This document shows positions 9,453-39,993 of a stretch of DNA of 64,000 nt, piece by piece. The notes beneath the pieces were generated by a model. It did not search any database, was not told the DNA's origin, and was given only the letters and a program-made list of their open reading frames with translations. The stretch spans positions 1 through 64,000 of IMG/VR virus record IMGVR_UViG_3300048625_000299; one strand, 5' to 3'. Every line of letters begins with the position of its first letter. Within the stretch, counting starts at the first letter, position 1. The translations under genes were made by a program, and so were the position numbers.

Positions 9453-10508
9453 ATGAAGATAGCCCTGCTAGGTGACACGCATATTGGTGCGCGTAACGAC
9501 AACCTGAATTTCCATGAGTTCTTCAAGAAGTTTTACGACGAAGTATTCTTTCCATACCTCCATGAACATAAGATCGACCATGTGATTCAGCTTGGCGATA
9601 TGTTCGATCGTCGAAAATATATCAACTTTCAATCGTTGAAACATGGTCGTGAGTATTTGTTGAATCCGTTAAATGATCTCAACGCTTGGGCCTTGGTCGG
9701 CAATCACGACACCTACTACAAGAATACGAACGACGTCAATTCGTTGGAGCTGTTGCTTGATGGGTACAAAAACATCAACGTAATCAACACACCTACAGAG
9801 ATCCACTTCGAAGACAAGTTGTTCCTGCTGATGCCATGGATATGTCCAGAGAATGAGCGAGAGTGTATCGACGCAATAACAAACACCAAAGCAGATGTTG
9901 TTATCGGACATTTTGAAATCACCGGATTTGAAATGTATAGAGGAACTGTGTGTGATGAGGGATTGGATGTTAGCATCTTCCGTCGACCACCAATGGTGTT
10001 GTCTGGACACTTTCACCACAGATCGCAGAATGGAAATATCCACTATCTCGGAACACCATATGAAATGACATGGTCCGATCATGGAGACATCAAGGGATTC
10101 CACATCTACGACACTGACACTGGCGAGCTCGAATTCATCCCCAACCCTCATGTCATGTTCCATAAGATCCTGTATGATGATCAGGAGAAGACGATGGAAG
10201 AAGTCACAAGCATCGATTATGAGAAGTATAGTGGAACCATTGTCAAGCTGATTGTCAGGACCAAGAATAACCCAGCATGGTTCGATCTTATGATCGATAA
10301 GCTAGAGAAGGCTGGTGTTAGTGATATCCAAGTCGTTGAGGATCATTTCCACCTAGATGTGGAAACGGATGATGAAATCATTAACGAAGCTGAAGATACG
10401 CTAACCATCTTGACGAAGTACATCGACGGGCTGCAGATACAAGGTGACAGACAACGTCTTGATTCGCTAATGCAGAACTTATATCACGAAGCATTGAGTA
10501 CAGAATAA
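9453..10508 (+). CDS. gp47: recombination endonuclease subunit (Mre11-like)
   Basis: GDTHIG, LGDMFD, GNHD, SGHFH. Confidence 0.95.
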   Translation: MKIALLGDTHIGARNDNLNFHEFFKKFYDEVFFPYLHEHKIDHVIQLGDMFDRRKYINFQSLKHGREYLLNPLNDLNAWALVGNHDTYYKNTNDVNSLELLLDGYKNINVINTPTEIHFEDKLFLLMPWICPENERECIDAITNTKADVVIGHFEITGFEMYRGTVCDEGLDVSIFRRPPMVLSGHFHHRSQNGNIHYLGTPYEMTWSDHGDIKGFHIYDTDTGELEFIPNPHVMFHKILYDDQEKTMEEVTSIDYEKYSGTIVKLIVRTKNNPAWFDLMIDKLEKAGVSDIQVVEDHFHLDVETDDEIINEAEDTLTILTKYIDGLQIQGDRQRLDSLMQNLYHEALSTE

Positions 10509-11227
10509 TGAGATTCTTGATCACAGGACATGAGGGGTTTATTGGCCGCCATGTATTCGAATACTACTCATCTAAGTATGATTGTGTAGGACTGGATATC
10601 AAATCCGGCAACGATATTACCGAGTGTGTGTTGCCAGAATGTGATGTCATCATCCACCTTGCTGGGTTGCCTGGTGTAAGGCGTAGCAAGGAGTTTCCAG
10701 AAGACTATTGGCACGCCAATGTGATTGGTAGTCAGAGGGTATTTGAACATGCTGAACGCATTGGAGCAAGGCTGTTGTATGCGTCTAGTTCGTCCGTAAA
10801 GGGGTGGTACAACAATCCATATGCCACGACCAAGAAGGTGGTGGAAATGATTGCTCCTCCACGTTCATTGGGAATGAGATTCCATACTGTATATGGCCGC
10901 GATTCTCGACCCGACATGATGTATGATATGTTGATCGGCCATCGTGCAAGGTACATTACCAACCACATGCGAGACTTTACACACGTTGATGATGTTGTAA
11001 CAGCTATAGACGTACTGTATAATAATGGGGTTTGTGGTATTGTTGACATAGGATCTAACAATCCAGTATCTGTAATTGAGCTATCGCAGGCAGCAGGCCA
11101 ATCACTACCAATAATGCAAGTGGGTGGAGAGGCCCACATTACGTGCGCCAATACCACATTATTAACTTCGCTTGGTTGGAAGCCAACGAAGCATGTATTA
11201 ACTGAAATGCGTAATGATATACTTTAA
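10508..11227 (+). CDS. NAD-dependent epimerase/dehydratase
   Basis: ITGHEGFIG Rossmann motif, YASSSS, YATTK, RDFTHV. Confidence 0.88.
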   Translation: MRFLITGHEGFIGRHVFEYYSSKYDCVGLDIKSGNDITECVLPECDVIIHLAGLPGVRRSKEFPEDYWHANVIGSQRVFEHAERIGARLLYASSSSVKGWYNNPYATTKKVVEMIAPPRSLGMRFHTVYGRDSRPDMMYDMLIGHRARYITNHMRDFTHVDDVVTAIDVLYNNGVCGIVDIGSNNPVSVIELSQAAGQSLPIMQVGGEAHITCANTTLLTSLGWKPTKHVLTEMRNDIL

Positions 11228-25123: not shown

Positions 25124-25200
25124 GCTTCGTTAGCTCAGTTGGTTAGAGCGCATGCCTGTCACGCATGAGGCCGTCGGTTCGAGCCCGATACGGGGCGCCA
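25124..25200 (+). tRNA. tRNA-Asp(GTC)
   Basis: Canonical cloverleaf, CCA. Confidence 0.95.
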
Positions 25201-25371: not shown

Positions 25372-25442
25372 TAGAATAGTTACAGCAACACACAAAGAAC
25401 ACCAAACTTTTAATTTGACATGTTCGTCAACGCTATTCTGTT
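25372..25442 (+). ncRNA. stem-cassette RNA A (Lys-UUU anticodon-loop-like cargo)
   Basis: TAGAATAG-TTAC-AGCAA ... CTATTCTG-TT. Confidence 0.75.
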
Positions 25443-25691: not shown

Positions 25692-25813
25692 TAGGATACT
25701 TGCAGCAATGACTTAAAAGTCAGTAGGTTCGATTCCTACATTTGGAGCTTTCCAAATCCGTCGTAAGGTACGACAAACGATTGAAACTCGTTCAACTAAA
25801 AAGGTATCCTGTT
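25692..25813 (+). ncRNA. stem-cassette RNA B (permuted tRNA-Phe-like cargo)
   Basis: TAGGATAC-TTGC-AGCAA ... GTATCCTG-TT; cargo order V, T, acceptor, D, anticodon(GAA). Confidence 0.8.
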
Positions 25814-26210: not shown

Positions 26211-26273
26211 TACGTAATTTGAGTACAATGGTCACACGCCCTTGCTTAGATTACAAACGCCATAATAATTTAT

Positions 26274-26349
26274 TCCATCTTAGTATTCTCGGTGAGTACG
26301 CCCGGCTGTTAACCGGAGAAGGTTGGTTCGAATCCAACAGATGGAGCCA
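26274..26349 (+). tRNA. tRNA-Asn(GTT)
   Basis: Cloverleaf, CCA. Confidence 0.85.
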
Positions 26350-26354
26350 GTTAT

Positions 26355-26413
26355 GGGGCAAAAAGCGGATTCTGTCCAATGAATCTTTTGCAGCACACTG
26401 TAATGCCCCGCCA
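26355..26413 (+). ncRNA. 59-nt D-armless tRNA-like mini RNA
   Basis: GGGGCA/TGCCCC-GCCA acceptor plus two hairpins. Confidence 0.5.
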
Positions 26414-26417
26414 AATT

Positions 26418-26481
26418 TAGGATCCTTTCAGCAAAACTTATACTTTCACTTTTGGCTGTGAAAAGCAAAGCGGATCCTGTT
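26418..26481 (+). ncRNA. stem-cassette RNA C
   Basis: TAGGATCC-TTTC-AGCAA ... GGATCCTG-TT. Confidence 0.75.
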
Positions 26482-26487
26482 GAACAT

Positions 26488-26565
26488 GCCCACGTAGTGC
26501 AATTGGTAGGAGACAACGGTCTTAGAAGCCGAACAGTGTCGGTTCGAATCCGACCGTGGGCACCA
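26488..26565 (+). tRNA. tRNA-Leu(TAG), short variable loop
   Basis: Cloverleaf, A73, CCA. Confidence 0.88.
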
Positions 26566-26568
26566 AAT

Positions 26569-26637
26569 TTATACACAGATGTTGGTTCGATTCCAACCCT
26601 GATGAAGAGTAGCATAATATGGCAATGCAGTGTATAA
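26569..26637 (+). ncRNA. stand-alone permuted tRNA-elbow mimic
   Basis: TTATACAC / T-arm / short linker / D-arm / GTGTATAA. Confidence 0.55.
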
Positions 26638-26688
26638 TCCAAGCCTCGCGCTGACTTGTCGCGTATAATGAGATAAATTACAAGTCAC

Positions 26689-26791
26689 TTTTCTAGAGCA
26701 TATCGCGGCTGAGGCTAGGCCGTTATGTGGATCATAGCTGGGCCTTTCGGCTTGGTCGCCAGTTCAATTCTGGTAGATGTGTTCTAGAAAA
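26689..26791 (+). ncRNA. cloverleaf-like element S4 with extended terminal stem
   Basis: 16-bp closing stem, D-like arm, GCCAG-TTCAATT-CTGGT T-arm, no CCA. Confidence 0.5.
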
Positions 26792-27110: not shown

Positions 27111-27183
27111 GCGGGGTTAGTTTAGTGGTAAAACACTTTCCTTCCAAGTAAGAGTTGCGGGTTCGATTCCCGCACCCCGCTCC
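27111..27183 (+). tRNA. tRNA-Gly(TCC), no encoded CCA
   Basis: Canonical cloverleaf ending TCC-C. Confidence 0.9.
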
Positions 27184-27207
27184 CTTGAGTCGATGTCAAG
27201 ACTCGAA
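27182..27207 (+). repeat. 26-nt direct repeat, copy 1
   Basis: CCCTTGAGTCGATGTCAAGACTCGAA, identical to 28690-28715. Confidence 0.9.
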
Positions 27208-27223
27208 ACTTATAAATAAAAGT

Positions 27224-27763
27224 ATGGAAAAAACATACTATACAATTTATAAGATAACGAATCGGATTAATGGCAAGATCTATATTGGATCGCATAAGAC
27301 CAAAAATCTGAATGACAACTATATGGGTTCTGGAAAATACTTAAAGTATGCCCAAGACAAATATGGTATTGAAAAGTTTGAAAAAGAAATATTGTTCGTA
27401 TTTGATACGGCGCAAGAGATGTACGCTAAGGAAGCGGAAATTGTCAATGTTGAGTTCTTAGCTGAGCATAACACTTACAACATTAAAGTTGGAGGGTTTG
27501 GCGGTTGGGATCACATTAATAATGATGTAGAATTTCGTACGCAGAAAAATCAGCTAGCAAGGGCACGAGCTCAAGCTGCAGGGGCTTCGGATAAAGCAAA
27601 GTTATACAACACTGAACGGAGACGTCAGTATGATCTGAATCCAGCACGATGCGCTTCATGTAGCCAACCGCTTGATTTTTTAAAGCGCAAGAATAAATTC
27701 TGTGGGCATAGTTGTTCAGCTAAGTTGACCAACACCACTAGAGTTCGCAAATCGAACAAGTAA
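27224..27763 (+). CDS. GIY-YIG (Seg-like) homing endonuclease
   Basis: YTIYKITN...KIYIGSH, YMGSG, YN motif; late promoter at 27211. Confidence 0.9.
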   Translation: MEKTYYTIYKITNRINGKIYIGSHKTKNLNDNYMGSGKYLKYAQDKYGIEKFEKEILFVFDTAQEMYAKEAEIVNVEFLAEHNTYNIKVGGFGGWDHINNDVEFRTQKNQLARARAQAAGASDKAKLYNTERRRQYDLNPARCASCSQPLDFLKRKNKFCGHSCSAKLTNTTRVRKSNK

Positions 27764-27767
27764 GTTT

Positions 27768-27829
27768 TAGGATAGTTACCGCAATCAAAAAGCTAACTAT
27801 GGTTGTCTAGCGACAAAAGCTATCCTGTT
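27768..27829 (+). ncRNA. stem-cassette RNA D
   Basis: TAGGATAG-TTAC-CGCAA ... CTATCCTG-TT. Confidence 0.75.
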
Positions 27830-28618: not shown

Positions 28619-28691
28619 CAGGGGGTATGATAGTGGTAGTCGCCGAGGTTTGGAACCTTGTAGTGGGAGTTCGATTCTCCCTCCCCTGACC
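28619..28691 (+). tRNA. tRNA-Pro(TGG), no encoded CCA
   Basis: Cloverleaf ending ACC-C. Confidence 0.85.
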
Positions 28692-28715
28692 CTTGAGTCG
28701 ATGTCAAGACTCGAA
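28690..28715 (+). repeat. 26-nt direct repeat, copy 2
   Basis: Identical to 27182-27207. Confidence 0.9.
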
Positions 28716-28726
28716 CGATTATAAAT

Positions 28727-29389
28727 ATGTGTATGTATTACACTGTTTATAAAACGACGAATAAGATTAATGGCAAGATCTATATTGGATCACATAAGAC
28801 CAAAAATCTTAATGATAATTACCTGGGTTCAGGTAAGTATTTGAAGCGTGCCATAGAAAAGTATGGAGTAGATTCTTTCACTAGGGAAATACTGTTCATA
28901 TTTGAAACAGCAGAGGAAATGTATGCTAAAGAGGCGGAGCTTGTGAACGCAGAGTTCCTAACTGAAGAAAATACATACAACCTCAAGGTTGGAGGTTTTG
29001 GTGGGTTTGACTATATAAATTCCAACCCCGAAAAATACCTAACGCCCAAGAGGCTTGCAGCGCTGATGCCTGGACATGAGTTGCAAAGGCGGCTGTGGGA
29101 AAAATATTATTCCGATCCTGCGTTTAGAGCCAAGCGCCAAGAGCAATCTAGACATGCTCTAAACGTAGCTAGAACAAAATCGCGTGCTCCCTTCAAAGGA
29201 CGCAAGCATTCGGATGTTGTAAAACAAAAAATAGCTGCAAAGGCTAGAGAAAGATCTGCAGATAATCCACAAGGAAACTCCCAGTATGGGACGATATGGA
29301 TTACAGATGGTGTTGAAAATAAGAAGATTAATAAAACTGATGTCTTACCAGATGGTTGGTATAGGGGCAGAGTTTTTAAAAAAGTATAA
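28727..29389 (+). CDS. GIY-YIG (Seg-like) homing endonuclease with NUMOD3-like segment
   Basis: YTVYKTTN...KIYIGSH; FKGRKHS; WITDG...GWYRGR; late promoter at 28720. Confidence 0.9.
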   Translation: MCMYYTVYKTTNKINGKIYIGSHKTKNLNDNYLGSGKYLKRAIEKYGVDSFTREILFIFETAEEMYAKEAELVNAEFLTEENTYNLKVGGFGGFDYINSNPEKYLTPKRLAALMPGHELQRRLWEKYYSDPAFRAKRQEQSRHALNVARTKSRAPFKGRKHSDVVKQKIAAKARERSADNPQGNSQYGTIWITDGVENKKINKTDVLPDGWYRGRVFKKV

Positions 29390-29390
29390 T

Positions 29391-29468
29391 GTCTGGGTGG
29401 CAGAGCGGCCCATTGCAACGGATTGCAAATCCGTAAAGTCGTCGGTTCAAATCCGACCCCAGATTCCA
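29391..29468 (+). tRNA. tRNA-Cys(GCA)
   Basis: U73, CCA. Confidence 0.9.
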
Positions 29469-29476
29469 ATTTTAAT

Positions 29477-29550
29477 GCGTGGTTAGTTTAATGGTAAAAT
29501 CAGACGTTGCCAACGTTTAGTTAAGGGTTCGATTCCCTTACCCCGCACCA
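29477..29550 (+). tRNA. tRNA-Gly(GCC)
   Basis: Cloverleaf, CCA. Confidence 0.88.
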
Positions 29551-29556
29551 GTTTAT

Positions 29557-29632
29557 GCTCCTTTCGTATAGTGATTTATTACATCGGTTTTGTAGTCCGA
29601 GAACAGCAGTTTGATTCTGCTAGGGAGCTCCA
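29557..29632 (+). tRNA. tRNA-Thr(TGT), atypical
   Basis: Cloverleaf, TTTGA T-loop, CCA. Confidence 0.78.
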
Positions 29633-29640
29633 GTTTATTT

Positions 29641-29716
29641 GCTCGCGAAGTATTAGTTGGTGGTATGCCGCTTTCGTAATGCGGAGGATCGGGTTCGAGG
29701 CCTGACGTGAGCACCA
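29641..29716 (+). tRNA. tRNA-Thr(CGT)
   Basis: Cloverleaf, CCA. Confidence 0.8.
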
Positions 29717-29720
29717 AAGT

Positions 29721-29940
29721 TTTGTAAGTGTCAGCAAGTGCAGTCACGCTAGTGATGGTAAGTTCGAACTACCTAACTAGTAAAAGGGGACGGGTTCAAC
29801 TCCCGGCTGATCGGAAGATCGGTGCAGATTGGTTGCTAACTGGACAGGTACCCAAGTGATATCCATCGCGTGACGGGGTCAGGCTAGGCGGCCGGTAGGT
29901 CCTGACTAAATCTACGATAAACGTGACGTAGGCTTACAAA
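29721..29940 (+). ncRNA. 220-nt structured RNA X with two T-loop-like hairpins
   Basis: TTTGTAAG-TGTC-AGCAA ... CTTACAAA; GTCACG/CGTGAC helix. Confidence 0.55.
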
Positions 29941-29949
29941 TTTAATTAT

Positions 29950-30024
29950 GGAGTAGTTAGTTTAGTGGCAAAACCGCGGGTTGTGATTCCGCTATCACGG
30001 GTTCGATTCCCGTACTTCTCCCCA
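29950..30024 (+). tRNA. tRNA-His(GTG)
   Basis: G-1:C73, CCA. Confidence 0.9.
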
Positions 30025-30141
30025 TATGAAAGTATTCTTGGTATAAGTCAAAGCGGAAGAAGAGACCCACGTGGATGCATACGCAACGGTCTCAGAGCTC
30101 AGTCTCCTTCTAGGCCTGCATTCGAGAGTGCTTTTATATGG
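30022..30141 (+). ncRNA. long-stem structured element S6
   Basis: CCATATGAAAGTATTCT / AGAGTGCTTTTATATGG. Confidence 0.55.
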
Positions 30142-30146
30142 CATAT

Positions 30147-30234
30147 GCCTCGGTGTTGGAATTTGGTAGACAAGCTAGAATGAGAGTCTAGTATCCGAAA
30201 GGATGTGTGGGTTCGATTCCCATCTGAGGCACCA
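30147..30234 (+). tRNA. tRNA-Leu(GAG)
   Basis: Class II cloverleaf, CCA. Confidence 0.9.
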
Positions 30235-30249
30235 ATTAAAAAGTACATT

Positions 30250-30325
30250 GCCTGTGTAGCTCCAATGGTAGAGCAGTGGATTGAAAATCCATGTGTTGCT
30301 GGTTCGAGTCCAGCCATAGGCACCA
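30250..30325 (+). tRNA. tRNA-Phe(GAA)
   Basis: Canonical, CCA. Confidence 0.95.
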
Positions 30326-30336
30326 AGTTTGACCAT

Positions 30337-30456
30337 TAGGTTCATTTCAGCAATCAAAATAATCTTTCTTAGAAAAAGAGGGTCTGGGTTCGAATCCCAG
30401 CGCGGAGTTGGTCTTCCGTGTGGTGTAAGGGTAGCACGAAAAAAGTTGAACCTGTT
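30337..30456 (+). ncRNA. stem-cassette RNA E (permuted tRNA, TAG anticodon)
   Basis: TAGGTTCA-TTTC-AGCAA ... TGAACCTG-TT; cargo order anticodon, T, acceptor, D. Confidence 0.82.
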
Positions 30457-30470
30457 AAAATAAATGCAAT

Positions 30471-30547
30471 GGCTCAGTAGTTCCAATTGGCAGAACGGCG
30501 GATTCCAAATCCGCGTGTTGGAGGTTCGAATCCTTCCTGGGTCGCCA
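30471..30547 (+). tRNA. tRNA-Trp(CCA)
   Basis: Canonical, G73, CCA; U11-A24. Confidence 0.95.
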
Positions 30548-30554
30548 AAAGTTT

Positions 30555-30656
30555 TAGGATAGTTACAGCAAAACAAAACGCTTGTCATTGGTTGACAATT
30601 TGCCTTCTAAGCAAACCTAGCAGGTTCAATTCCTGCAGCAAAACAACTATCCTGTT
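30555..30656 (+). ncRNA. stem-cassette RNA F (acceptor-less tRNA-Arg(TCT)-like cargo)
   Basis: TAGGATAG-TTAC-AGCAA ... CTATCCTG-TT; D, anticodon and T arms in normal order. Confidence 0.8.
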
Positions 30657-30665
30657 GATTATCAC

Positions 30666-30756
30666 GGAGAGCGAAGCAGACAGGCGCGCTGCCACCGCCT
30701 TGAAAGCGGCTGGATCCTGAAAGGGATTGGATTTCGAGTATACCCGCTCTCCGCCA
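30666..30756 (+). tRNA. tRNA-Ser(TGA), atypical T-arm
   Basis: Class II, G73, CCA. Confidence 0.8.
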
Positions 30757-30763
30757 AAATTAT

Positions 30764-30878
30764 GTCGCGATGGTGTAATGGTAGCACGCTATAAAAGGTG
30801 ATCCTGATTAGGATACGTGCAGCATACATTTTCCACTGTCAATGGAGATGCCCAGGTTCGATTCCTGGTCGCGACGCC
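30764..30878 (+). tRNA. tRNA-Asp(GTC) interrupted by a 42-nt insertion (30789-30830)
   Basis: GTCGCGA/TCGCGAC acceptor with D, anticodon and T arms intact; insert carries cassette motifs in swapped order. Confidence 0.75.
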
Positions 30879-30883
30879 TCTTT

Positions 30884-30989
30884 TAGGATGAATGCAGCAA
30901 CATAAAAACTCTTCCACCATTCAGGGAGGCCGGCCCGCAGGGGGCATGTCGTTGGGTTCGAGTCCCGGTCTTAGACACATCATCCTGTT
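30884..30989 (+). ncRNA. stem-cassette RNA H (T-arm-containing cargo)
   Basis: TAGGATGA-ATGC-AGCAA ... TCATCCTG-TT. Confidence 0.78.
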
Positions 30990-30998
30990 ATTCAATGT

Positions 30999-31074
30999 TC
31001 CCTCTTCGCCAAGTTGGTAAGGCATCGGATTTTGATTCCGACATTCGGTGGTTCGAGTCCATCAGGGGGAGCCA
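30999..31074 (+). tRNA. tRNA-Gln(TTG)
   Basis: Canonical, CCA. Confidence 0.93.
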
Positions 31075-31221
31075 AGTTTTTGCAGTCTTAGCCTGGAGCT
31101 AGGGTAAAGGGTGTTGCGGGTGGCATCGAGACTCTACGGAGATTCGAGCGTTAAAGTTATCACCGATAAACATCGTAGCGCAACTTCAATCAATATGTGG
31201 AGCCTGCTGCAGAATTAATAT

Positions 31222-31310
31222 GGAAGATACAGCTGTGTGGTCACAGCATCCGCCTGGAACGCGGACGGTTGGTTCTGCTGGCCGGAGTTCGACTCTCCTA
31301 TCTTCCTCCA
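31222..31310 (+). tRNA. tRNA-Ser(GGA)
   Basis: Class II, CCA. Confidence 0.82.
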
Positions 31311-31434
31311 TATAAAAGCTCTTTGAGCAGCTACACTGGAGTTCATCAAGTAACCGCCAAGTCGACTACGCGGTAAACGTTGCCAGGAAGTAGGGCTGCC
31401 ATGGATTCAAGTACCGCAGAGAGCCTCTATATGG
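31308..31434 (+). ncRNA. long-stem structured element S7
   Basis: CCATATAAAAGCTCT / AGAGCCTCTATATGG. Confidence 0.55.
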
Positions 31435-31520
31435 ACGATTACCTAGTCAGGGACTAGCACTGATTCGAAACCAGTTGGATTCAGAAATGGGTTGGGGTTC
31501 GATACCTCAGTCGTCCGCCA
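31433..31520 (+). tRNA. tRNA-Ser(CGA)
   Basis: Class II, G73, CCA. Confidence 0.85.
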
Positions 31521-31542
31521 TTCACAAATTAAGGGGATACCG

Positions 31543-31677
31543 ATGAAACGAAAAGATGTATTCGATAAGGCATATGGTAGTGTCCCCCATGAAGTTGGCT
31601 TCAATGTCGACCTAGATATTAATGTATTCAGAGGATTCAGGTATTATTACTTGAAGATGATACGTTTCTTTAGATAG
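31543..31677 (+). CDS. small hypothetical protein
   Basis: AAGGGG RBS, 44 aa. Confidence 0.55.
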   Translation: MKRKDVFDKAYGSVPHEVGFNVDLDINVFRGFRYYYLKMIRFFR

Positions 31678-31684
31678 GAGCATT

Positions 31685-31933
31685 ATGTCAAATGAGCAAC
31701 ACAAAGAACAACATTCCAAACGTCTGCATCAAAAAGAGACGCATGTTGCAAAGCAAGTAAAGATCGCTAAGGCGTATGGCATATCTGTTAAAGAGCCACA
31801 CAAGCTAGCAAAGCATAATGCAATGAATTGTGGAGATCCAAACTGCTTGATGTGTATGAATCCCCGCAAAGCATTTAATGAGAAGACGATTCAAGAACGT
31901 CGATTTGATCAGCCTTTAGCTCAAGGAGAGTAA
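31685..31933 (+). CDS. conserved phage hypothetical protein (CxxxxCxxC)
   Basis: AGGAG RBS; CGDPNCLMCMNPRK. Confidence 0.7.
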   Translation: MSNEQHKEQHSKRLHQKETHVAKQVKIAKAYGISVKEPHKLAKHNAMNCGDPNCLMCMNPRKAFNEKTIQERRFDQPLAQGE

Positions 31934-31934
31934 A

Positions 31935-32609
31935 ATGAAAAAGGTAATCGAGATTCGCGCTGCTGAAGGCGGCGACGATAGTAAATTATTCGTAAAGGAC
32001 CTAGCGCAAAGCTACGTCAAGTTCGCAGACCGCAAGGGCTGAACTACCCGCCTGATAGGTGAGTACCTCGGAGAGCTTCATATTGAAGTCAAGGGGTCTG
32101 ACTTATCCGGACTAGAAAACGAAGCAGGCGGGCATCGAATCCAAAGAGTTCCTCCGACGGAACGAAAAGGTAGAGTACATACTAGCACCGTCACGGTCGC
32201 TATCATTGATAGCGCATCCGAGATCAAGACGGAATCTATACCAGACCATGAATTAAAAGTGGAGTGGTATAGCGGGACGGGGGCTGGTGGGCAACATCGA
32301 AACAAGCATCAAAACAGTTGTAGACTAACACACATTCCAACTGGAATAGTAACTACTGCACAATGTCGTAGTAGAGAGAATAGTCTGAACGAAGCACGAT
32401 CGTCATTGACACATCGTGTGAACTCGTTGACTAAGGATGCGTTTCATAGTAATGTAGCCAGTAACAGAAAACAACAAGTTGGTTCTGGGATGCGTGGCGA
32501 TAAGATCAGGACATATCGTTTCCAAGATGATCGTGTGCAAGACCATAGAACCGATAAAGTAGTCAGCTTGAAGAAAGTGATGGCTGGCGCGTTTGATCTG
32601 TTTTGGTAA
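31935..32609 (+). CDS. class I peptide release factor-like protein with in-frame TGA at codon 36
   Basis: EIRAAEGG, HRIQRVPPTERKGRVHTS, GAGGQHRNK, KIRTY in one frame across TGA 32040-32042. Confidence 0.85.
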
Positions 32610-32628
32610 ACACAACAAAGGAAGTATA

Positions 32629-32820
32629 ATGGCAAATCGTATTAACGAGTTTGAAGAAGTAGTTTCAGCAATGCGTGCTGATTTCGAAAAGTTCTATGAT
32701 AAAGAAACTAATGCTGCTGGCGCTCGCGTCCGTAAGCATTGCCAAGCGCTGGCTGTTCTCTGTAAGGAAGTTCGTAAGGACGTCACTGAAGTGAAAGCTG
32801 CACGCGCTGCTGCAAAGTAA
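32629..32820 (+). CDS. histone H1-like (Hc1-type) small protein
   Basis: KFYDKETNAAGARVRK...KEVRKDV. Confidence 0.65.
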   Translation: MANRINEFEEVVSAMRADFEKFYDKETNAAGARVRKHCQALAVLCKEVRKDVTEVKAARAAAK

Positions 32821-32905
32821 TTCTGCTTGCAAGCTGATCTCGGTGCTCCCGTTCTCCCGAGTTAGAATAGCTGATAATGTTTCAGTAAGACGGGGCCAAA
32901 TTTAA

Positions 32906-32995
32906 GGTGCGGTCCCATAATGGTATTGGAGCGGATTGCTAATCCGTCGGTCGGCGAAAGCCGGCTTCTGAGTTCGAGTCTCAGTCGCACCGCCA
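32906..32995 (+). tRNA. tRNA-Ser(GCT)
   Basis: Class II, CCA. Confidence 0.9.
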
Positions 32996-33000
32996 GTTCT

Positions 33001-33090
33001 CCCGCTGTAGCTCAAGGAGAGCAGGGGGTCTTATAAGCCCTTAATCTAGATAAGGTCCAGGATGTGGTTCGATTCCACACAGCGGGACCA
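33001..33090 (+). tRNA. tRNA-Ile(TAT) with long variable region
   Basis: CTTATAA loop, A73, CCA. Confidence 0.8.
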
Positions 33091-33097
33091 AAAGTTT

Positions 33098-33300
33098 TAG
33101 GATCCATGCAGCAACATAAAATGCATTGAAAGCCTCGTGTTGGTGGTGCAAGTCCACCCTCCCTCACTAAGGGCACTTTATGGAGTGACCCGCCATACTA
33201 CTAAAGGATCGCAACCTGTAGTAATATCCAACGTATGGTATTGTGCCCTTAGTGAGGGAGTAGCTCAAGTAGTAGAGCAGAGTAAAAAGCGGATCCTGTT
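33098..33300 (+). ncRNA. stem-cassette RNA I (YrlA-like permuted module with 18-bp acceptor)
   Basis: TAGGATCC-ATGC-AGCAA ... GGATCCTG-TT; T-arm, CTCCCTCACTAAGGGCAC/GTGCCCTTAGTGAGGGAG, D-arm. Confidence 0.82.
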
Positions 33301-35715: not shown

Positions 35716-35735
35716 TGTAAAGAATTGTAAGTTTT

Positions 35736-36226
35736 TGAGGACAGCGTTATAGTTATCGTCAGATCGTAACGCACCTGATAACTCTAAATGTGGTGGTTCG
35801 AATCCATCCCCAAGCACAAATCGTAGTGATAGTATTATTTGTGCTTGGGTAGCCGAAGTGGTAGAGGCAAAGAGACGGGTGTAGAGATCAAGTATCGTTA
35901 TAGTAGTTGTATCGACCTCACAGACTTATTGTAAGGGTTTAACTTACCCGCCGGAGAGCTTATCCTTATACTAAACATATAAAGATAAACAAGATTATGC
36001 TGGTTCGAGTCCAGCCTGCGTCGCCAAAGTGATACGTAGATTGCTTTGGGACGCAGTGAGCAAATGGTAAAGCTGCTTGTTAATTAATACATCGTTATCG
36101 TAACGGCTCTAGTGTGCAAAACTAAGTTAAACGTGAAGAATCTTCACAAGAGACGCTTATACTCAACAGCTACGTTGTATAAGCGGTTCTTCTAAAGCGA
36201 TCTGTAAAAGATTTCTTCAGAAGAAT
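35736..36226 (+). ncRNA. ~500-nt structured RNA with two permuted tRNA modules
   Basis: T-arm, closed acceptor, D-arm modules at 35782-35875 and 35988-36081. Confidence 0.7.
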
Positions 36227-37688: not shown

Positions 37689-37926
37689 TAGAGTAGATTC
37701 AGCAAACCAAAAAATCCAGGAGTAACGTCCTGATTACTACCCCCTACCGTACCCCGAAAAGGGTTTCCGAAAGGATGGAGGGAATGCGTCAACCTAGTAA
37801 TAGGTTGGCTTTGTAGTCTTGCGAGATCAAGGATCGGGCGCCAACGATTGGCGATAGGGTCATGGGGCTATGGCAAGTGCCAGATGTGGATGACCAGAAA
37901 ATAATTACTGTCCCGCCTACTCTGTT
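37689..37926 (+). ncRNA. stem-cassette RNA J (long multi-hairpin cargo)
   Basis: TAGAGTAG-ATTC-AGCAA ... CTACTCTG-TT. Confidence 0.78.
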
Positions 37927-37931
37927 GTTTT

Positions 37932-37988
37932 TAGGTTAAGTTCCGCACAACAATTTCTATTCATAAAAGAGAAAAAGTTTAACCTGTT
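37932..37988 (+). ncRNA. stem-cassette RNA K
   Basis: TAGGTTAA-GTTC-CGCA ... TTAACCTG-TT, 19 nt before the ATG. Confidence 0.75.
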
Positions 37989-38007: not shown

Positions 38008-39441
38008 ATGTCAACATTCGCTGAAGCTGTAGTAAACCAAGAAGCCCGTACCACGAATGGTATGGTGGCACGCAAGTCCACTGCAAATGCGTGCGTCGAT
38101 TTATTCTTCAAGATCGGTGCTTCCCGCGGTAAGGACATCACGAAGGATTTCGTGGCCGCATACGCTGAGAACAAAGATGTCGCGTTGCGCATCGCTCAAT
38201 GGGTCCGTGATGCTCGTGGTGGGGCAGGCGAACGTGATCTGTACCGCCAGATCTTGAAGTATCTCGAAAAGCACGATAAGGACGCTGCTGCAGCTTTGCT
38301 GTTGAAGACTCCTGAAATCGGTCGCTGGGATGATATCTTCGTGTTCGAAGACAAAGATTTGAAGGCTAAGGCTTTCACGATGTTGGGAGATGCTCTCCGC
38401 GTACGTAACGGTCTCGCTGCAAAGTGGACGCCACGTCAAGGTAAGCTCGCTGCTGAAATCCGGTCATTCTTCGGAATGTCCCCAAAGTTCTATCGTAAGT
38501 CGTTGGTTGAATTGACCAACGTTGTGGAACAACAAATGTGTGCAAAAGAATGGGATGCAATCAACTTCTCGCATGTGCCGTCCGTGGCTGCTGCTCGTTA
38601 CAAGAAAGCATTCAGCCGTAACACACAAGAGTATACCAAGTACGTTGCTGAGTTGATGAAGGATCCAAAGGATCGTAAAGTCAACGTCAAGATCAACGCT
38701 GGCGCTGTGTTTCCATATGATGTGTTGAAGGGCGTTATCGGTGCATACCGCAACAACTACAGCGCAACTGAACTCGGAGCATTGCAAGCTCAATGGGATG
38801 CGATGGAAAACTTCATCGGCGACGCAAACGTCTTGCCGTTGGTAGACGTGTCTGGTTCGATGTCATGTCGTGCTGGTGGTTCTGCTTCCCAAAGCACGAC
38901 TACTTGTATGGATGTCGCAGTGTCGCTAGGTTTGTACCTTGCTGACAAGAACAAGGGTAAGTTCAAGGATACGTTCTTGACATTCTCAGGTTCACCAGAG
39001 TTGCTGAACCTGAAGGGCAACATTGTTCAGAAAGTCCAACAAATGTCATCCTCTAACTGGGGTATGAACACAGACTTGGTGAAGGCGATGGATAAGATCT
39101 TGAGCACAGCCAAGAACGGCAATGTTCCTCAAGAAGAAATGCCAGACATGCTGTTGATTCTTTCAGACATGCAATTCGATCAATGCGCTCGTTTCGACGA
39201 CTCTGCAATGAAGATGATTGCACGTAAGTTCGAAGAAGCAGGCTACGAATTGCCAAAGATCGTATTCTGGAACCTGAACGCTGCGGACAATGTCCCAGTT
39301 AAGTACGACACTCGTGGTGTTGCTTTGGTGTCTGGCTTCTCGCCAGCTATCATGACGGCAGTACTCGGTGGCGATGCTGATAAGTTCACACCAGAAGCTA
39401 TGATGCTGAAGGCAGTGATGCTTCCACGTTACGATCTGTAA
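38008..39441 (+). CDS. Ro60/TROVE-like protein with vWA domain (DUF2828-type)
   Basis: RDARGGAGER, GRWDD, AAKWTPR, MIDAS DVSGSM, SDMQFD, VFWNL, VSGFS. Confidence 0.82.
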   Translation: MSTFAEAVVNQEARTTNGMVARKSTANACVDLFFKIGASRGKDITKDFVAAYAENKDVALRIAQWVRDARGGAGERDLYRQILKYLEKHDKDAAAALLLKTPEIGRWDDIFVFEDKDLKAKAFTMLGDALRVRNGLAAKWTPRQGKLAAEIRSFFGMSPKFYRKSLVELTNVVEQQMCAKEWDAINFSHVPSVAAARYKKAFSRNTQEYTKYVAELMKDPKDRKVNVKINAGAVFPYDVLKGVIGAYRNNYSATELGALQAQWDAMENFIGDANVLPLVDVSGSMSCRAGGSASQSTTTCMDVAVSLGLYLADKNKGKFKDTFLTFSGSPELLNLKGNIVQKVQQMSSSNWGMNTDLVKAMDKILSTAKNGNVPQEEMPDMLLILSDMQFDQCARFDDSAMKMIARKFEEAGYELPKIVFWNLNAADNVPVKYDTRGVALVSGFSPAIMTAVLGGDADKFTPEAMMLKAVMLPRYDL

Positions 39442-39478: not shown

Positions 39479-39495
39479 AAAAATTGAGGTGTACC

Positions 39496-39993
39496 ATGAA
39501 GAAAATTGATCTTGCTGAAGTGAAAAGATTCATCGAAGCACAATCTGAAGATACCAAAATCTATATCGGCGCCGATTCGACGCGATTCAAGATGGAGGGC
39601 AGATGGTATGCTGACTACACTCTTGCAGTTGTAGTCCACATCGACGGTAACCATGGTTGCAAAATCTTTGGTGAAGTACAACGTGAACTAGACTACGACC
39701 AAAAGAAGTCGAAGCCAGCAATGCGTCTGATGAACGAAGTGTATAAGGTTTCGGAACTATTCCAAAATCTTTCGGAAGTGTTAGAGGACCGTTATGTCGA
39801 AGTTCACTTGGACATTAACCCTAACATGATGTATGGCTCCTCGTGCGTCGTACAACAAGCTATCGGATACATCAAGGGTACGTGTAACGTCACGCCAATG
39901 GTGAAGCCACAAGCGTTCGCAGCTTCGTATGCAGCTGACAGACTGAAAGAAGTCTTGGCATCCGACAAGATGAAAGCAGTAGCGACAGCATAA
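39496..39993 (+). CDS. RNase H-like YkuK family protein
   Basis: IYIGADS, RLMNEV, EVHLDIN, AASYAAD. Confidence 0.8.
   Translation: MKKIDLAEVKRFIEAQSEDTKIYIGADSTRFKMEGRWYADYTLAVVVHIDGNHGCKIFGEVQRELDYDQKKSKPAMRLMNEVYKVSELFQNLSEVLEDRYVEVHLDINPNMMYGSSCVVQQAIGYIKGTCNVTPMVKPQAFAASYAADRLKEVLASDKMKAVATA

What the first reader, a model, noticed from the sequence alone, without database searches (positions are those of the whole stretch)
30764..30878. tRNA-Asp with the cassette handle inserted inside-out between the D and anticodon arms
Seen: a linear tRNA-Asp(GTC) has a 42-nt insert (30789-30830) reading AAAAGGTG-ATCCTG-AT-TAGGATAC-GTGC-AGCA, i.e. the 3' handle arm placed before the 5' arm and motif. 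This is the circular permutation of cassette E, which opens at the same D/anticodon junction. Inference: either a tRNA with free acceptor ends carrying a built-in protein-docking tag, or a small intron-like element. In the intron case the other cassettes would be permuted intron-exon arrangements yielding circular or re-ligated tRNAs. No CCA is encoded (ends GCCTC).
Basis: partly seen in the sequence, partly recalled or inferred. Interest (0 to 1): 0.84.

Follow-up and report, generated by a model that had tools for sequence, protein, structure and literature searches.

The report
tRNA-Asp carrying a Ro-like docking hairpin
A freshwater jumbo phage encodes a tRNA-Asp-shaped RNA with a 42-base hairpin at its hinge, and that hairpin is the capped form of a conserved "CAGCAA handle" found next to a Ro60-like protein gene in many phages, so it is most likely a one-piece Y-RNA/tRNA chimera and not an intron.

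Summary
Window 30764-30876 folds as a canonical tRNA-Asp(GUC): 50.3 bits on the Rfam tRNA model against a threshold of 29. A 42-nt insert (30789-30830) sits between G26 and the anticodon stem. The insert holds the two halves of the array's repeated handle in swapped order, so the helix is capped by a loop.

The handle occurs 9 times in the window against 0.06 expected, all on the + strand. Its stems covary and tolerate G.U but never A.C, so it acts as RNA. It ends within 45 nt of a DUF2828+vWA gene (38008-39441) in 41 of 57 distinct related loci. The predicted fold of that protein matches only Ro60 over its full length.

The same handle lies beside this gene family in Listeria phage P100plus, mycobacteriophage MsGreen and E. 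coli phage wV8. The tRNA-with-internal-handle is a family of its own: 16 distinct sequences in IMG/VR, 94.9% of cells paired, 14 pairs with changes on both sides.

The docking-tag reading is supported. The intron reading is not: the insert is too small to self-splice, no spliced contig was seen, and in some relatives the handle replaces the anticodon arm. Binding has not been shown. I rate it a new variant of the Ro60/Y-RNA kind.

The parts
30764..30876 (+). Whole chimeric gene: a tRNA-Asp(GUC)-shaped RNA with an internal handle hairpin
   Evidence: Rfam tRNA model 50.3 bits, positions 1-71 of 71. There are 16 distinct homologues with covarying stems.
30764..30788 (+). Acceptor 5' strand (30764-70), U8/G9, D arm (30773-87) and G26 (30788)
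   Evidence: Read from the sequence. The acceptor helix is 100% paired, with 5 of 7 pairs changed on both sides across the family.
30789..30830 (+). 42-nt insert at the 26/27 hinge, containing the capped (inside-out) handle
   Evidence: The same junction carries the insert in all 16 family members.
30798..30816 (+). Handle helix: 3'-type arm 30798-30806, AT 30807-08, 5'-type arm TAGGATAC 30809-16. It forms 7 bp with one bulged base.
   Evidence: Fold. The helix is 100% paired in the family. Two pairs covary, and one of them was not constrained by the search pattern.
30820..30825 (+). CAGCAU, the conserved CAGCAA motif of the handle's inner loop. The A-run of the opposite strand lies at 30793-30796.
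   Evidence: Consensus of 225 unique cassettes. CAGCA is invariant in the family.
30831..30847 (+). Anticodon arm, loop CUGUCAA, anticodon GUC at 30838-30840
30852..30878 (+). T arm (30852-68), acceptor 3' strand (30869-75), discriminator G (30876), encoded CC (30877-78). A76 is not encoded.
30337..30454 (+). It is the circular permutation of the chimera.
25372..25440 (+). Handle cassette with a short payload
25692..25811 (+). Handle cassette whose tRNA-like payload is permuted at the variable region. The acceptor is closed by a 4-nt loop and the anticodon-like loop reads GAA.
   Evidence: z -3.8
26418..26479 (+). Handle cassette with a hairpin payload
27768..27827 (+). Handle cassette with a short payload
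30555..30654 (+). Handle cassette in which the handle takes the place of the acceptor stem of a tRNA-like body (D, anticodon UCU and T arms)
30884..30987 (+). Handle cassette starting 6 nt after the chimera's encoded CC
33098..33298 (+). Handle cassette with a large payload
37689..37924 (+). Handle cassette with a large payload
37932..37986 (+). Last handle cassette. It ends 21 nt before the start codon of the Ro60-like gene, next to its ribosome-binding site.
38008..39441 (+). Ro60-like protein gene (Pfam DUF2828 + DUF7788/vWA, PHROG 850 'RNA-binding protein'), the proposed partner of the handle
   Evidence: The MIDAS motif DxSxS is invariant.
39484..39993 (+). PF04308 RNase H-like gene, often linked to the Ro60-like gene
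25124..25200 (+). Ordinary tRNA-Asp(GUC) of the same array, with CCA. The chimera is therefore not needed for decoding.

Best explanation
The locus encodes one RNA with two modules. The first is a complete tRNA-Asp(GUC) body with free acceptor ends. I infer that RNase P makes the 5' end and that A76 is added after trimming to the encoded G73-CC. The second is a 42-nt module at the hinge between G26 and the anticodon stem. This module is the phage's CAGCAA handle: a 7-8 bp helix whose inner end opens into a loop with CAGCA(A/U) on one strand and an A-run on the other.

In the normal cassettes the RNA's own 5' and 3' ends form the helix and the payload sits inside. Here the outer end is capped by a loop and the tRNA's acceptor end is the free end. 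The face of the handle towards the payload is unchanged.

I propose that the handle is the docking site of the Ro60-like ring protein encoded at 38008-39441. The handle RNAs would then be this protein family's Y RNAs. The chimera would tether or present the Ro-like protein to whatever recognises tRNA-Asp: processing and CCA enzymes, the synthetase, or tRNA-targeting nucleases. The likely setting is RNA quality control, repair or counter-defence during infection. It would be a genetically hard-wired, one-piece counterpart of the RNase P-cleaved, CCA-tailed YrlA of M. smegmatis.

Shown: the anatomy, the conservation and covariation, the genetic linkage, and the Ro60-like fold. Inferred: binding, end processing and biological role.
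For: 1. The tRNA body is real. It scores 50.3 bits on the Rfam tRNA model.

2. The chimera is a conserved family. It has 16 distinct members with 94.9% of cells paired and 14 pairs changed on both sides. No shuffle out of 500 reached these values, and slid controls gave 41-51% paired.

3. The handle is non-random and acts as RNA of the + strand. It occurs 9 times against 0.06 expected. There are 225 unique cassettes in relatives with a shared consensus. Among 249 cassettes the non-Watson-Crick stem pairs include 14 G.U and 0 A.C.

4. The handle is linked to the protein gene.
- A handle ends within 45 nt of the start codon in 41 of 57 distinct loci by a strict test. By eye, variant handles are also present in loci with only 41-48% protein identity.
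- The same architecture lies beside the homologous gene in Listeria phage P100plus (3 strict hits against 0.0 in shuffles), mycobacteriophage MsGreen (2 against 0.0) and E. coli phage wV8.

5. The protein is Ro60-like. The AlphaFold2 model has pLDDT 75.8. Its five best PDB matches, all full-length, are Ro60 from Xenopus, human and Thermus phage phiLo (E 1.5e-6 to 2.6e-5, TM about 0.55). The MIDAS motif is invariant. Homologues are annotated 'Ro-like RNA binding protein' in mycobacteriophages.

6. There is precedent.
- Y RNAs are modular, with a Ro-binding stem and a tRNA-like domain, and are encoded near Ro60 on the same strand. M. smegmatis YrlA is opened by RNase P and receives CCA in vivo (PMC4201824).
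- Phage phiLo Ro60 binds Y-like RNAs encoded upstream of its gene (PMC12135203).
- Bas63 gp130 is Ro60-like, sits next to tRNA genes and counters the Ppl defence (bioRxiv 10.1101/2024.10.10.617714).

7. Other capped-handle forms exist: a His/Tyr-like type, a type where the handle replaces the anticodon arm, and an acceptor minihelix with CCA. So the handle is a module in its own right.
Against: No binding or expression experiment exists for this RNA.

The handle does not resemble the known Ro-binding motifs (GGUCCGA; GNCGAAN0-1G). The Rfam YrlA model does not match it: the best hits elsewhere in the array score 21-28 bits against a threshold of 69.

The protein is Ro60-like by fold only. Pfam TROVE is not detected and the profile search of PDB sequences gives E 0.58.

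The handle in this gene departs from the consensus, with CAGCAU and one bulged base, although that bulge is conserved in the family.

The window's copy lacks A76.

The RNA evidence consists of assembled contigs from metatranscriptome libraries. These could contain DNA and cannot show RNA ends.

The perfect identity with the 94%-protein relative L003 lies inside a locally 98%-identical block, so it is not evidence of selection.
Confidence: 0.6

Rival explanations
1. The 42 nt are a small intron-like element. It is removed and the halves are ligated to give a normal tRNA-Asp. The permuted cassettes would be intron-exon permutations that yield circular or re-ligated tRNAs.
For: The insert interrupts an otherwise canonical tRNA at a single phosphodiester. 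From general knowledge, archaeal tRNAs carry introns at non-canonical positions and red-algal permuted tRNA genes mature through circles.
Against: 42 nt is too small for a group I or group II intron, and by eye I saw no bulge-helix-bulge at the junctions. RNA-library contigs carry the unspliced form (X2 contig 30374-30879 without differences), and no run shows a joint across 30789-30830, although contigs can miss rare forms. In relatives the capped handle replaces the anticodon arm or sits on a minihelix, so excision would not give a tRNA. The insert sequence is under handle-type constraint, with covarying helix and invariant CAGCA, rather than only splice-site constraint. Permuted cassettes close the acceptor with 4-6 nt loops lacking CCA, whereas 36 of 40 tRNA calls encode CCA. 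A normal tRNA-Asp(GUC) is already present.
Confidence: 0.05
2. The handle is a processing or stability element that works without the Ro-like protein. For example, it could be a recognition helix for a host or phage nuclease that frees cassettes from the polycistronic tRNA transcript, or a clamp that protects small RNAs. Its closeness to the Ro-like gene would then reflect shared operon regulation only.
For: Handles are flanked by conserved U-rich sequence, UUU on the 5' side and UUG on the 3' side. They usually follow a tRNA's CCA by AGUUU or AAUUU, which looks like RNase E-type trailer sites (my inference). The handle differs from known Ro-binding motifs.
Against: A pure processing signal does not explain why a handle sits in the 5' leader of the Ro-like gene in phages of Actinobacteria, Firmicutes and Proteobacteria at 31-42% protein identity. 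It also does not explain why a capped copy, which has no ends to free, is conserved inside a tRNA body. In P100plus the three cassettes have their own promoter directly before the gene.
Confidence: 0.2
3. It is a working decoding tRNA-Asp, and the hairpin is tolerated on the ribosome, for example as a regulatory tag.
For: The cloverleaf is intact, with U8, A14, G18G19, G26, U33 and the T-loop. GUC is kept in 12 of 16 family members and CCA is encoded in 13 of 16.
Against: From general knowledge of ribosome structures, the 26/27 hinge region lies close to 23S helix 69 in the A and P sites, so a 42-nt branch there should clash. I did not test this. Family members switch the anticodon to GUU, GCC, UCC or GAC and the discriminator between G and A without changing the body. 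A canonical tRNA-Asp(GUC) is present in the same array. Sister forms lack an anticodon arm altogether.
Confidence: 0.1
4. It is a dead tRNA gene that was hit by a mobile mini-cassette at the DNA level.
For: The array contains mobile elements: two GIY-YIG genes and one HNH gene. The window's copy lacks A76.
Against: Sixteen distinct homologues keep all helices through compensatory changes. The G.U against A.C asymmetry shows selection at the RNA level.
Confidence: 0.03

Closest known systems
Bacterial and phage Y RNAs of the YrlA type with Rsr/Ro60 (Chen et al. 2014, PMC4201824; Thermus phage phiLo Ro60 with Yrl1/2, PMC12135203)
   Same: Both are modular small RNAs with a protein-binding stem plus internal loop and a tRNA-like domain. 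Both are encoded close to, and on the same strand as, a ring-shaped HEAT+vWA protein, with several Y RNAs per genome. M. smegmatis YrlA is opened by RNase P and gets CCA, which gives the same end state as the chimera.
   Different: The handle motif (UAGGNNNN-N3-CAGCAA ... AAAAR-N-NNNNCCUG) is unrelated to GNCGAAN0-1G or GGUCCGA, and the Rfam YrlA model does not match. The protein is DUF2828+DUF7788 and is Ro60-like by fold only. There are about 10 handle RNAs per genome, embedded in a 40-tRNA array. In the chimera the binding module is an internal capped hairpin and the RNA's termini are a true acceptor stem, all in one piece.
Ro60-like proteins of cultured phages: Bas63 gp130, which counters Ppl (bioRxiv 10.1101/2024.10.10.617714), and Listeria phage CKA15_055, found in virions with abundant ncRNAs upstream (PMC12282133)
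   Same: The protein family and genomic setting next to tRNA genes are the same, judged from the wV8 and P100plus homologues. The authors of both papers suspected Y RNAs among or near the tRNAs.
   Different: Neither paper, in the passages I read, defines an RNA motif. The CAGCAA handle and the capped form inside a tRNA are not described there. That Bas63 gp130 is the orthologue of wV8 gp047 is my inference.
Circularly permuted tRNA genes of red algae and split or intron-containing archaeal tRNAs
   Same: Gene order is permuted relative to the mature tRNA, and an interruption lies at a non-anticodon-loop position.
   Different: Those are matured by the bulge-helix-bulge endonuclease and a ligase into ordinary tRNAs. 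Here there is no such motif by eye, the acceptor stems of the permuted forms are capped without CCA, and the inserted module is itself conserved.
Stable small RNAs of the phage T4 tRNA cluster (species 1 and 2), recalled from memory only
   Same: They are small stable tRNA-like RNAs of unknown function, co-transcribed with phage tRNAs.
   Different: No handle or Ro-like partner is known for them. I did not examine them here.

Membership tests
tRNA (Rfam RF00005) | Cloverleaf matching the covariance model above the gathering score | tested here: met
   50.3 bits against 29, model positions 1-71 of 71, with the 42 nt treated as an insertion
tRNA (Rfam RF00005) | 3' CCA end, encoded or added | tested here: inconclusive
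   G73-CC is encoded and A76 is not. 13 of 16 homologues encode CCA. Addition of A76 is not testable here.
tRNA (Rfam RF00005) | Aminoacylation and decoding | not testable with these tools
   Needs charging and translation assays
Y RNA / YrlA (Rfam RF02553) | Match to the YrlA covariance model | tested here: not met
   No hit on the locus. The best hits in the array score 21-28 bits against 69 and fall on ordinary tRNAs. There are none in MsGreen, KVP40 or wV8.
Y RNA / YrlA (Rfam RF02553) | Conserved Ro-binding motif GNCGAAN0-1G (or GGUCCGA) in the 5' strand of a stem formed by the RNA's ends | tested here: not met
   The handle has CAGCAA instead. In this gene the stem is an internal hairpin.
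Y RNA / YrlA (Rfam RF02553) | Encoded near a Ro60 orthologue on the same strand | tested here: met
   The gene lies 7.1 kb upstream on the same strand. Handles of the family abut the gene.
Y RNA / YrlA (Rfam RF02553) | tRNA-like module | tested here: met
   A T-loop is present in 55 of 75 cassettes of 80-119 nt.
Y RNA / YrlA (Rfam RF02553) | Physical binding to Ro60 | not testable with these tools
   Needs EMSA, RIP or a structure
Ro60 / TROVE protein family (the partner protein) | HEAT-repeat ring plus vWA domain fold | tested here: met
   The five best Foldseek matches are Ro60 structures, full length, E 1.5e-6 to 2.6e-5. The model is of moderate confidence, pLDDT 75.8 and pTM 0.69.
Ro60 / TROVE protein family (the partner protein) | Sequence-profile membership (Pfam TROVE) | tested here: not met
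   Pfam gives DUF2828 + DUF7788 only. The profile search against PDB gives phiLo Ro60 at E 0.58.
Ro60 / TROVE protein family (the partner protein) | MIDAS motif DxSxS in the vWA domain | tested here: met
   D280, S282 and S284 are invariant in 20 homologues
tRNA intron (group I, or BHB-dependent) | Self-splicing ribozyme core, or a bulge-helix-bulge at both junctions | tested here: not met
   The insert is 42 nt, Rfam reports no intron family there, and I saw no 3-4-3 bulge-helix-bulge by inspection
tRNA intron (group I, or BHB-dependent) | Spliced product exists | tested here: inconclusive
   No joint appears across the insert in 3 RNA-library runs and 1 DNA run, but these are assembled contigs that drop rare forms

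The most novel reading that the evidence does not exclude
The chimera is a chargeable, CCA-ended tRNA-Asp that is permanently bound, through its hinge hairpin, to a Ro60-like ring. It would be one member of a large, undescribed class of phage 'handle RNAs'. These would let one Ro-like protein be aimed at many tRNA-recognising partners, such as synthetases, processing enzymes or anticodon nucleases of host defence systems. That could explain why the protein counters a defence system in Bas63 and why many 'pseudo-tRNAs' sit in phage tRNA arrays.
Probability: 0.25. Interest if true: 0.85.

Novelty: new variant of a known kind. Interest (0 to 1): 0.72.

Why it matters
If the handle is the docking site of the DUF2828 Ro-like proteins, then a protein family present in at least 711 cultured phage records gains its missing RNA partners and a simple, searchable motif. 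These phages include KVP40, the Felix O1 group, the P100/A511 group and mycobacteriophages.

The capped form inside a true tRNA shape shows that nature has built a one-piece tRNA/Y-RNA hybrid. That bears directly on the open question of what the tRNA-like domain of bacterial Y RNAs is for. The same handle occurs in laboratory phages of E. coli, Listeria and M. smegmatis, so the idea can be tested with ordinary phage genetics and biochemistry.

It also warns annotators that some 'tRNA-OTHER' or pseudo-tRNA calls, and some short hypothetical ORFs in phage tRNA arrays, are probably handle RNAs. One example is wV8 gp048.

Tried and rejected
- A short-word BLAST of the locus against 79 related loci found only the near-identical L003. 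Structure-aware pattern scans were needed.
- Rfam at gathering and at permissive thresholds gave no Y RNA, ribozyme or intron family for the handle.
- Sequence searches of the protein against PDB and NCBIfam gave nothing significant. Only the fold search was informative.
- Perfect conservation of the locus in L003 and in runs X4 and X9 looked like purifying selection. It lies in a locally 98%-identical block while the rest is 84-90% identical, so I do not use it.
- I considered that capped-handle tRNAs all carry GUN anticodons, the queuosine family, because I first saw GUC, GUG and GUA. The wider family includes GCC, UCC and GAC, so I dropped the idea.
- I tried to equate the three most abundant CKA15 transcripts (26,236-26,727) with the three P100-type handle cassettes. 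The cassettes map to about 25.2-25.6 kb of CKA15, so they are not the same interval. Whether the second unannotated highly transcribed region is the cassette block could not be settled.
- KVP40 gave only weaker handle variants, and none passed the strict test.
- No capped-handle tRNA was found in the limited regions fetched from KVP40, wV8, MsGreen and P100plus.
- The reads laid were assembled contigs, so RNA ends and rare spliced forms could not be assessed.

Full report
**Source and setting.** The window is the first 64 kb of IMG/VR contig IMGVR_UViG_3300048625_000299 (234,864 bp), and window and contig coordinates coincide. The sequencing runs that hold it are labelled freshwater metagenomes. 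GenBank phages contain no close relative at the DNA level. Between 24.9 and 37.7 kb the + strand carries about 40 tRNA genes. Interspersed are homing-endonuclease genes, two GIY-YIG and one HNH, and a few other ORFs.

**The observation.**
- The region 30764-30876 reads as acceptor strand, D arm and G26, then 42 extra bases, then anticodon arm (loop CUGUCAA), variable region, T arm, acceptor strand and discriminator G, followed by CCTC.
- ARAGORN mis-called it as 30801-30878, and Rfam's default filters missed it. With lax filters the tRNA model aligns end to end at 50.3 bits, E 1.7e-8.
- The 42 bases contain an A-run, a 9-nt arm ending CCUG, two bases, the arm UAGGAUAC, GUG and CAGCAU.
- Elsewhere in the array the order is reversed: UAGGNNNN-N3-CAGCAA, then a payload, then AAAAR-N-NNNNCCUG. 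That normal form occurs 9 times against 0.06 expected, always on the + strand. The swapped form occurs once against 0.00 expected.
- Folding gives a 7-bp hairpin with one bulged base for the insert. For the normal cassettes it gives an 8-bp helix closing payloads that are often tRNA-like.
- Those payloads are permuted at the variable region (25692-25811) or at the D/anticodon junction (30337-30454), or have the handle in place of the acceptor stem (30555-30654).
The only adjustment is that CC is encoded and just A76 is missing.

**The handle is an RNA element.** In 79 loci from related phages I found 225 unique normal cassettes with a shared consensus. The stems covary, with 47 different 5' arms. 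When one non-Watson-Crick pair is allowed, 14 are G.U and none is A.C, apart from the near-invariant outer U.G. This asymmetry means the helix is selected in the + strand transcript, not as a DNA repeat.

**The partner protein.**
- Directly after the last cassette starts a 477-aa ORF (38008-39441). The cassette ends 21 nt before the ATG, next to the ribosome-binding site.
- Pfam calls the protein DUF2828 + DUF7788 and PHROGs calls it 'RNA-binding protein'.
- An AlphaFold2 model built on 20 homologues (pLDDT 75.8, pTM 0.69) has Ro60 structures as its five best PDB matches, all full-length. They come from Xenopus (1YVR, 1YVP), Thermus phage phiLo (9L5Y) and human (9NEN, 9NEP), with E 1.5e-6 to 2.6e-5 and TM about 0.55. 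Isolated vWA domains follow.
- The MIDAS motif DxSxS is invariant.
- At the sequence level there is no significant link to TROVE.
- Homologues occur in 711 cultured phage records and are annotated 'Ro-like RNA binding protein' in mycobacteriophages.

**Linkage of handle and protein.**
- A handle ends within 45 nt of the start codon in 41 of 57 distinct upstream regions by a strict test. By eye, most of the rest carry variants, including loci whose protein is only 41-48% identical.
- The same architecture recurs in cultured phages whose proteins are 31-42% identical to the window's.
- Listeria phage P100plus has three tandem cassettes behind their own promoter, 74 nt before the gene.
- Mycobacteriophage MsGreen has three cassettes just after the gene. 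One has a permuted tRNA-like payload of T arm, loop-closed 8-bp acceptor and D arm.
- E. coli phage wV8 has a cassette in the tRNA array 1 kb downstream. Its payload has the same permutation as the window's 30337 cassette. Its D arm is identical over 17 nt to that of the Asp chimera.
- A strict pattern gives 3, 2 and 2 hits in these loci against 0.0-0.1 in shuffles and none on the opposite strand.
- KVP40 shows only weaker variants, plus UUACAGCAA in the gene's 5' leader.

**The chimera is a family.**
- Pattern scans of IMG/VR retrieved 16 distinct tRNA-shaped genes with the capped handle at the same 26/27 junction.
- On their alignment, 94.9% of cells pair, against 41-51% when partners are slid. 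Fourteen of 28 pairs show changes on both sides. None of 500 shuffles reaches the observed values.
- The handle helix is 100% paired. One of its two covarying pairs was left free by the search pattern.
- Anticodons are GUC in 12 members and GUU, GCC, UCC or GAC in one member each. CCA is encoded in 13 of 16.
- Nearly all these loci also carry normal cassettes on the same strand.
- Other capped-handle forms exist in relatives. A His/Tyr-like type has the same junction. In another type the handle replaces the anticodon arm. A third is a bare acceptor minihelix ending in CCA.

**Expression.**
- One metatranscriptome run (X2) holds 85% of the sampled words of the 4-kb stretch searched, 29301-33300.
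- Its contig 30374-30879 covers the chimera unspliced and without differences, at a depth similar to its neighbours. No run shows a joint across the insert.
- These are assembled contigs from libraries that may contain DNA. They show presence only.

**Interpretation.**
- Known Y RNAs are modular: a stem with a conserved motif binds Ro60 and a second module binds other factors. Bacterial YrlA carries a tRNA-like module. M. smegmatis YrlA is even cut by RNase P at its acceptor-like stem and receives CCA in vivo (PMC4201824).
- The handle RNAs have the same logic with a different motif and a divergent Ro-like protein. The chimera is the one-piece, genetically fixed version of an opened, CCA-ended Y RNA.
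- I therefore take the insert to be a docking hairpin for the Ro-like protein, and the RNA to be a tRNA-Asp mimic or hybrid that couples that protein to tRNA-recognising partners.
- Three observations point to RNA repair, quality control or counter-defence as the setting: Bas63 gp130 counters the Ppl defence, an RtcB ligase lies near the P100 gene, and a release-factor-like gene sits inside this array. The actual role is unknown.

**Alternatives.** The intron reading fails on size, on the absence of a splicing motif by eye, on the unspliced contigs, and above all on the sister forms in which removal would not give a tRNA. A processing or stability signal independent of the protein remains possible (0.2) but does not explain the cross-phylum linkage to the gene. 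A decoding role is unlikely, given the branch at the hinge and the redundant normal tRNA-Asp at 25124-25200. A pseudogene is excluded by the covariation.

**Novelty.** Ro60 homologues and Y-like RNAs in phages are known (PMC4201824, PMC12135203). Two recent papers suspected Y RNAs near DUF2828-type genes. In the library I could search I found no description of the CAGCAA handle, of its many cassettes inside tRNA arrays, or of a tRNA carrying the capped handle. I rate it a new variant of a known kind.

Noticed in passing
L134:3620-3885 (Listeria phage P100plus); L133:4484-4740 (Mycobacterium phage MsGreen); L132:8368-8494 (Escherichia phage wV8): The same CAGCAA handle cassettes lie beside the DUF2828/Ro-like gene of cultured phages. 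The wV8 cassette is a permuted tRNA-like RNA that overlaps the annotated hypothetical CDS gp048 on the opposite strand, which is probably a mis-annotation.
   Followed up: partly
window 31935-32609: A release-factor-like gene (PCRF fragment + RF-1 domain) is interrupted by an in-frame TGA at 32040-32042. The frame continues with clear RF similarity after the stop. This could be readthrough, recoding or autoregulation. No tRNA with anticodon UCA was called in the array.
   Followed up: partly
window 29721-29945 (core 29735-29875): A variant handle (ends UUUGUAAG/CUUACAAA, CAGCAA at 29731) encloses a payload of about 200 nt. The inner 141 nt reach a depth of about 9,500-10,800 in RNA run X2 against 64-290 for neighbours, with sequencing adapters at both ends. 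It is therefore a very abundant discrete small RNA. Rfam has no match.
   Followed up: partly
window 27111-27763 and 28619-29389: Two SegE-like GIY-YIG endonuclease genes each follow a tRNA (Gly-UCC, Pro-UGG). In both, CCA is truncated to CC by the same junction sequence CTTGAGTCGATGTCAAGACTCGAA, which looks like a repeated homing insertion at tRNA 3' ends.
   Followed up: partly
window 30664-30756: A tRNA-Ser(UGA)-like sequence with an 8-bp acceptor stem, a long variable arm and CCA has an aberrant T arm. Neither ARAGORN nor Rfam calls it.
   Followed up: no
window 35720-36030: Structured intergenic RNA with T-arm-like and acceptor-like pieces in permuted order ends in CCA. There is a weak Rfam hit to the permuted beta-proteobacterial tmRNA (19.8 bits, E 0.008), so it may be a permuted tmRNA-like gene.
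   Followed up: no
window 39484-39993; L131:7482-8012 (KVP40.0299): A PF04308 RNase H-like gene directly follows the Ro-like gene here and in KVP40. It lies within the fetched flanks in 45 of 79 related loci, so it may be a functional partner.
   Followed up: partly
L134:6809-8020 (P100plus); paper PMC12282133: An RtcB-type RNA ligase lies 1.3 kb downstream of the P100plus Ro-like gene. The CKA15 orthologue (CKA15_055) was detected in purified virions with 57% sequence coverage.
   Followed up: no
window 26570-26637: A permuted tRNA-like piece (T arm, closed stem, D-like arm) is closed by the helix UAUACAC/GUGUAUA and has no CAGCAA handle. It is the site of a weak YrlA hit (23.8 bits).
   Followed up: no
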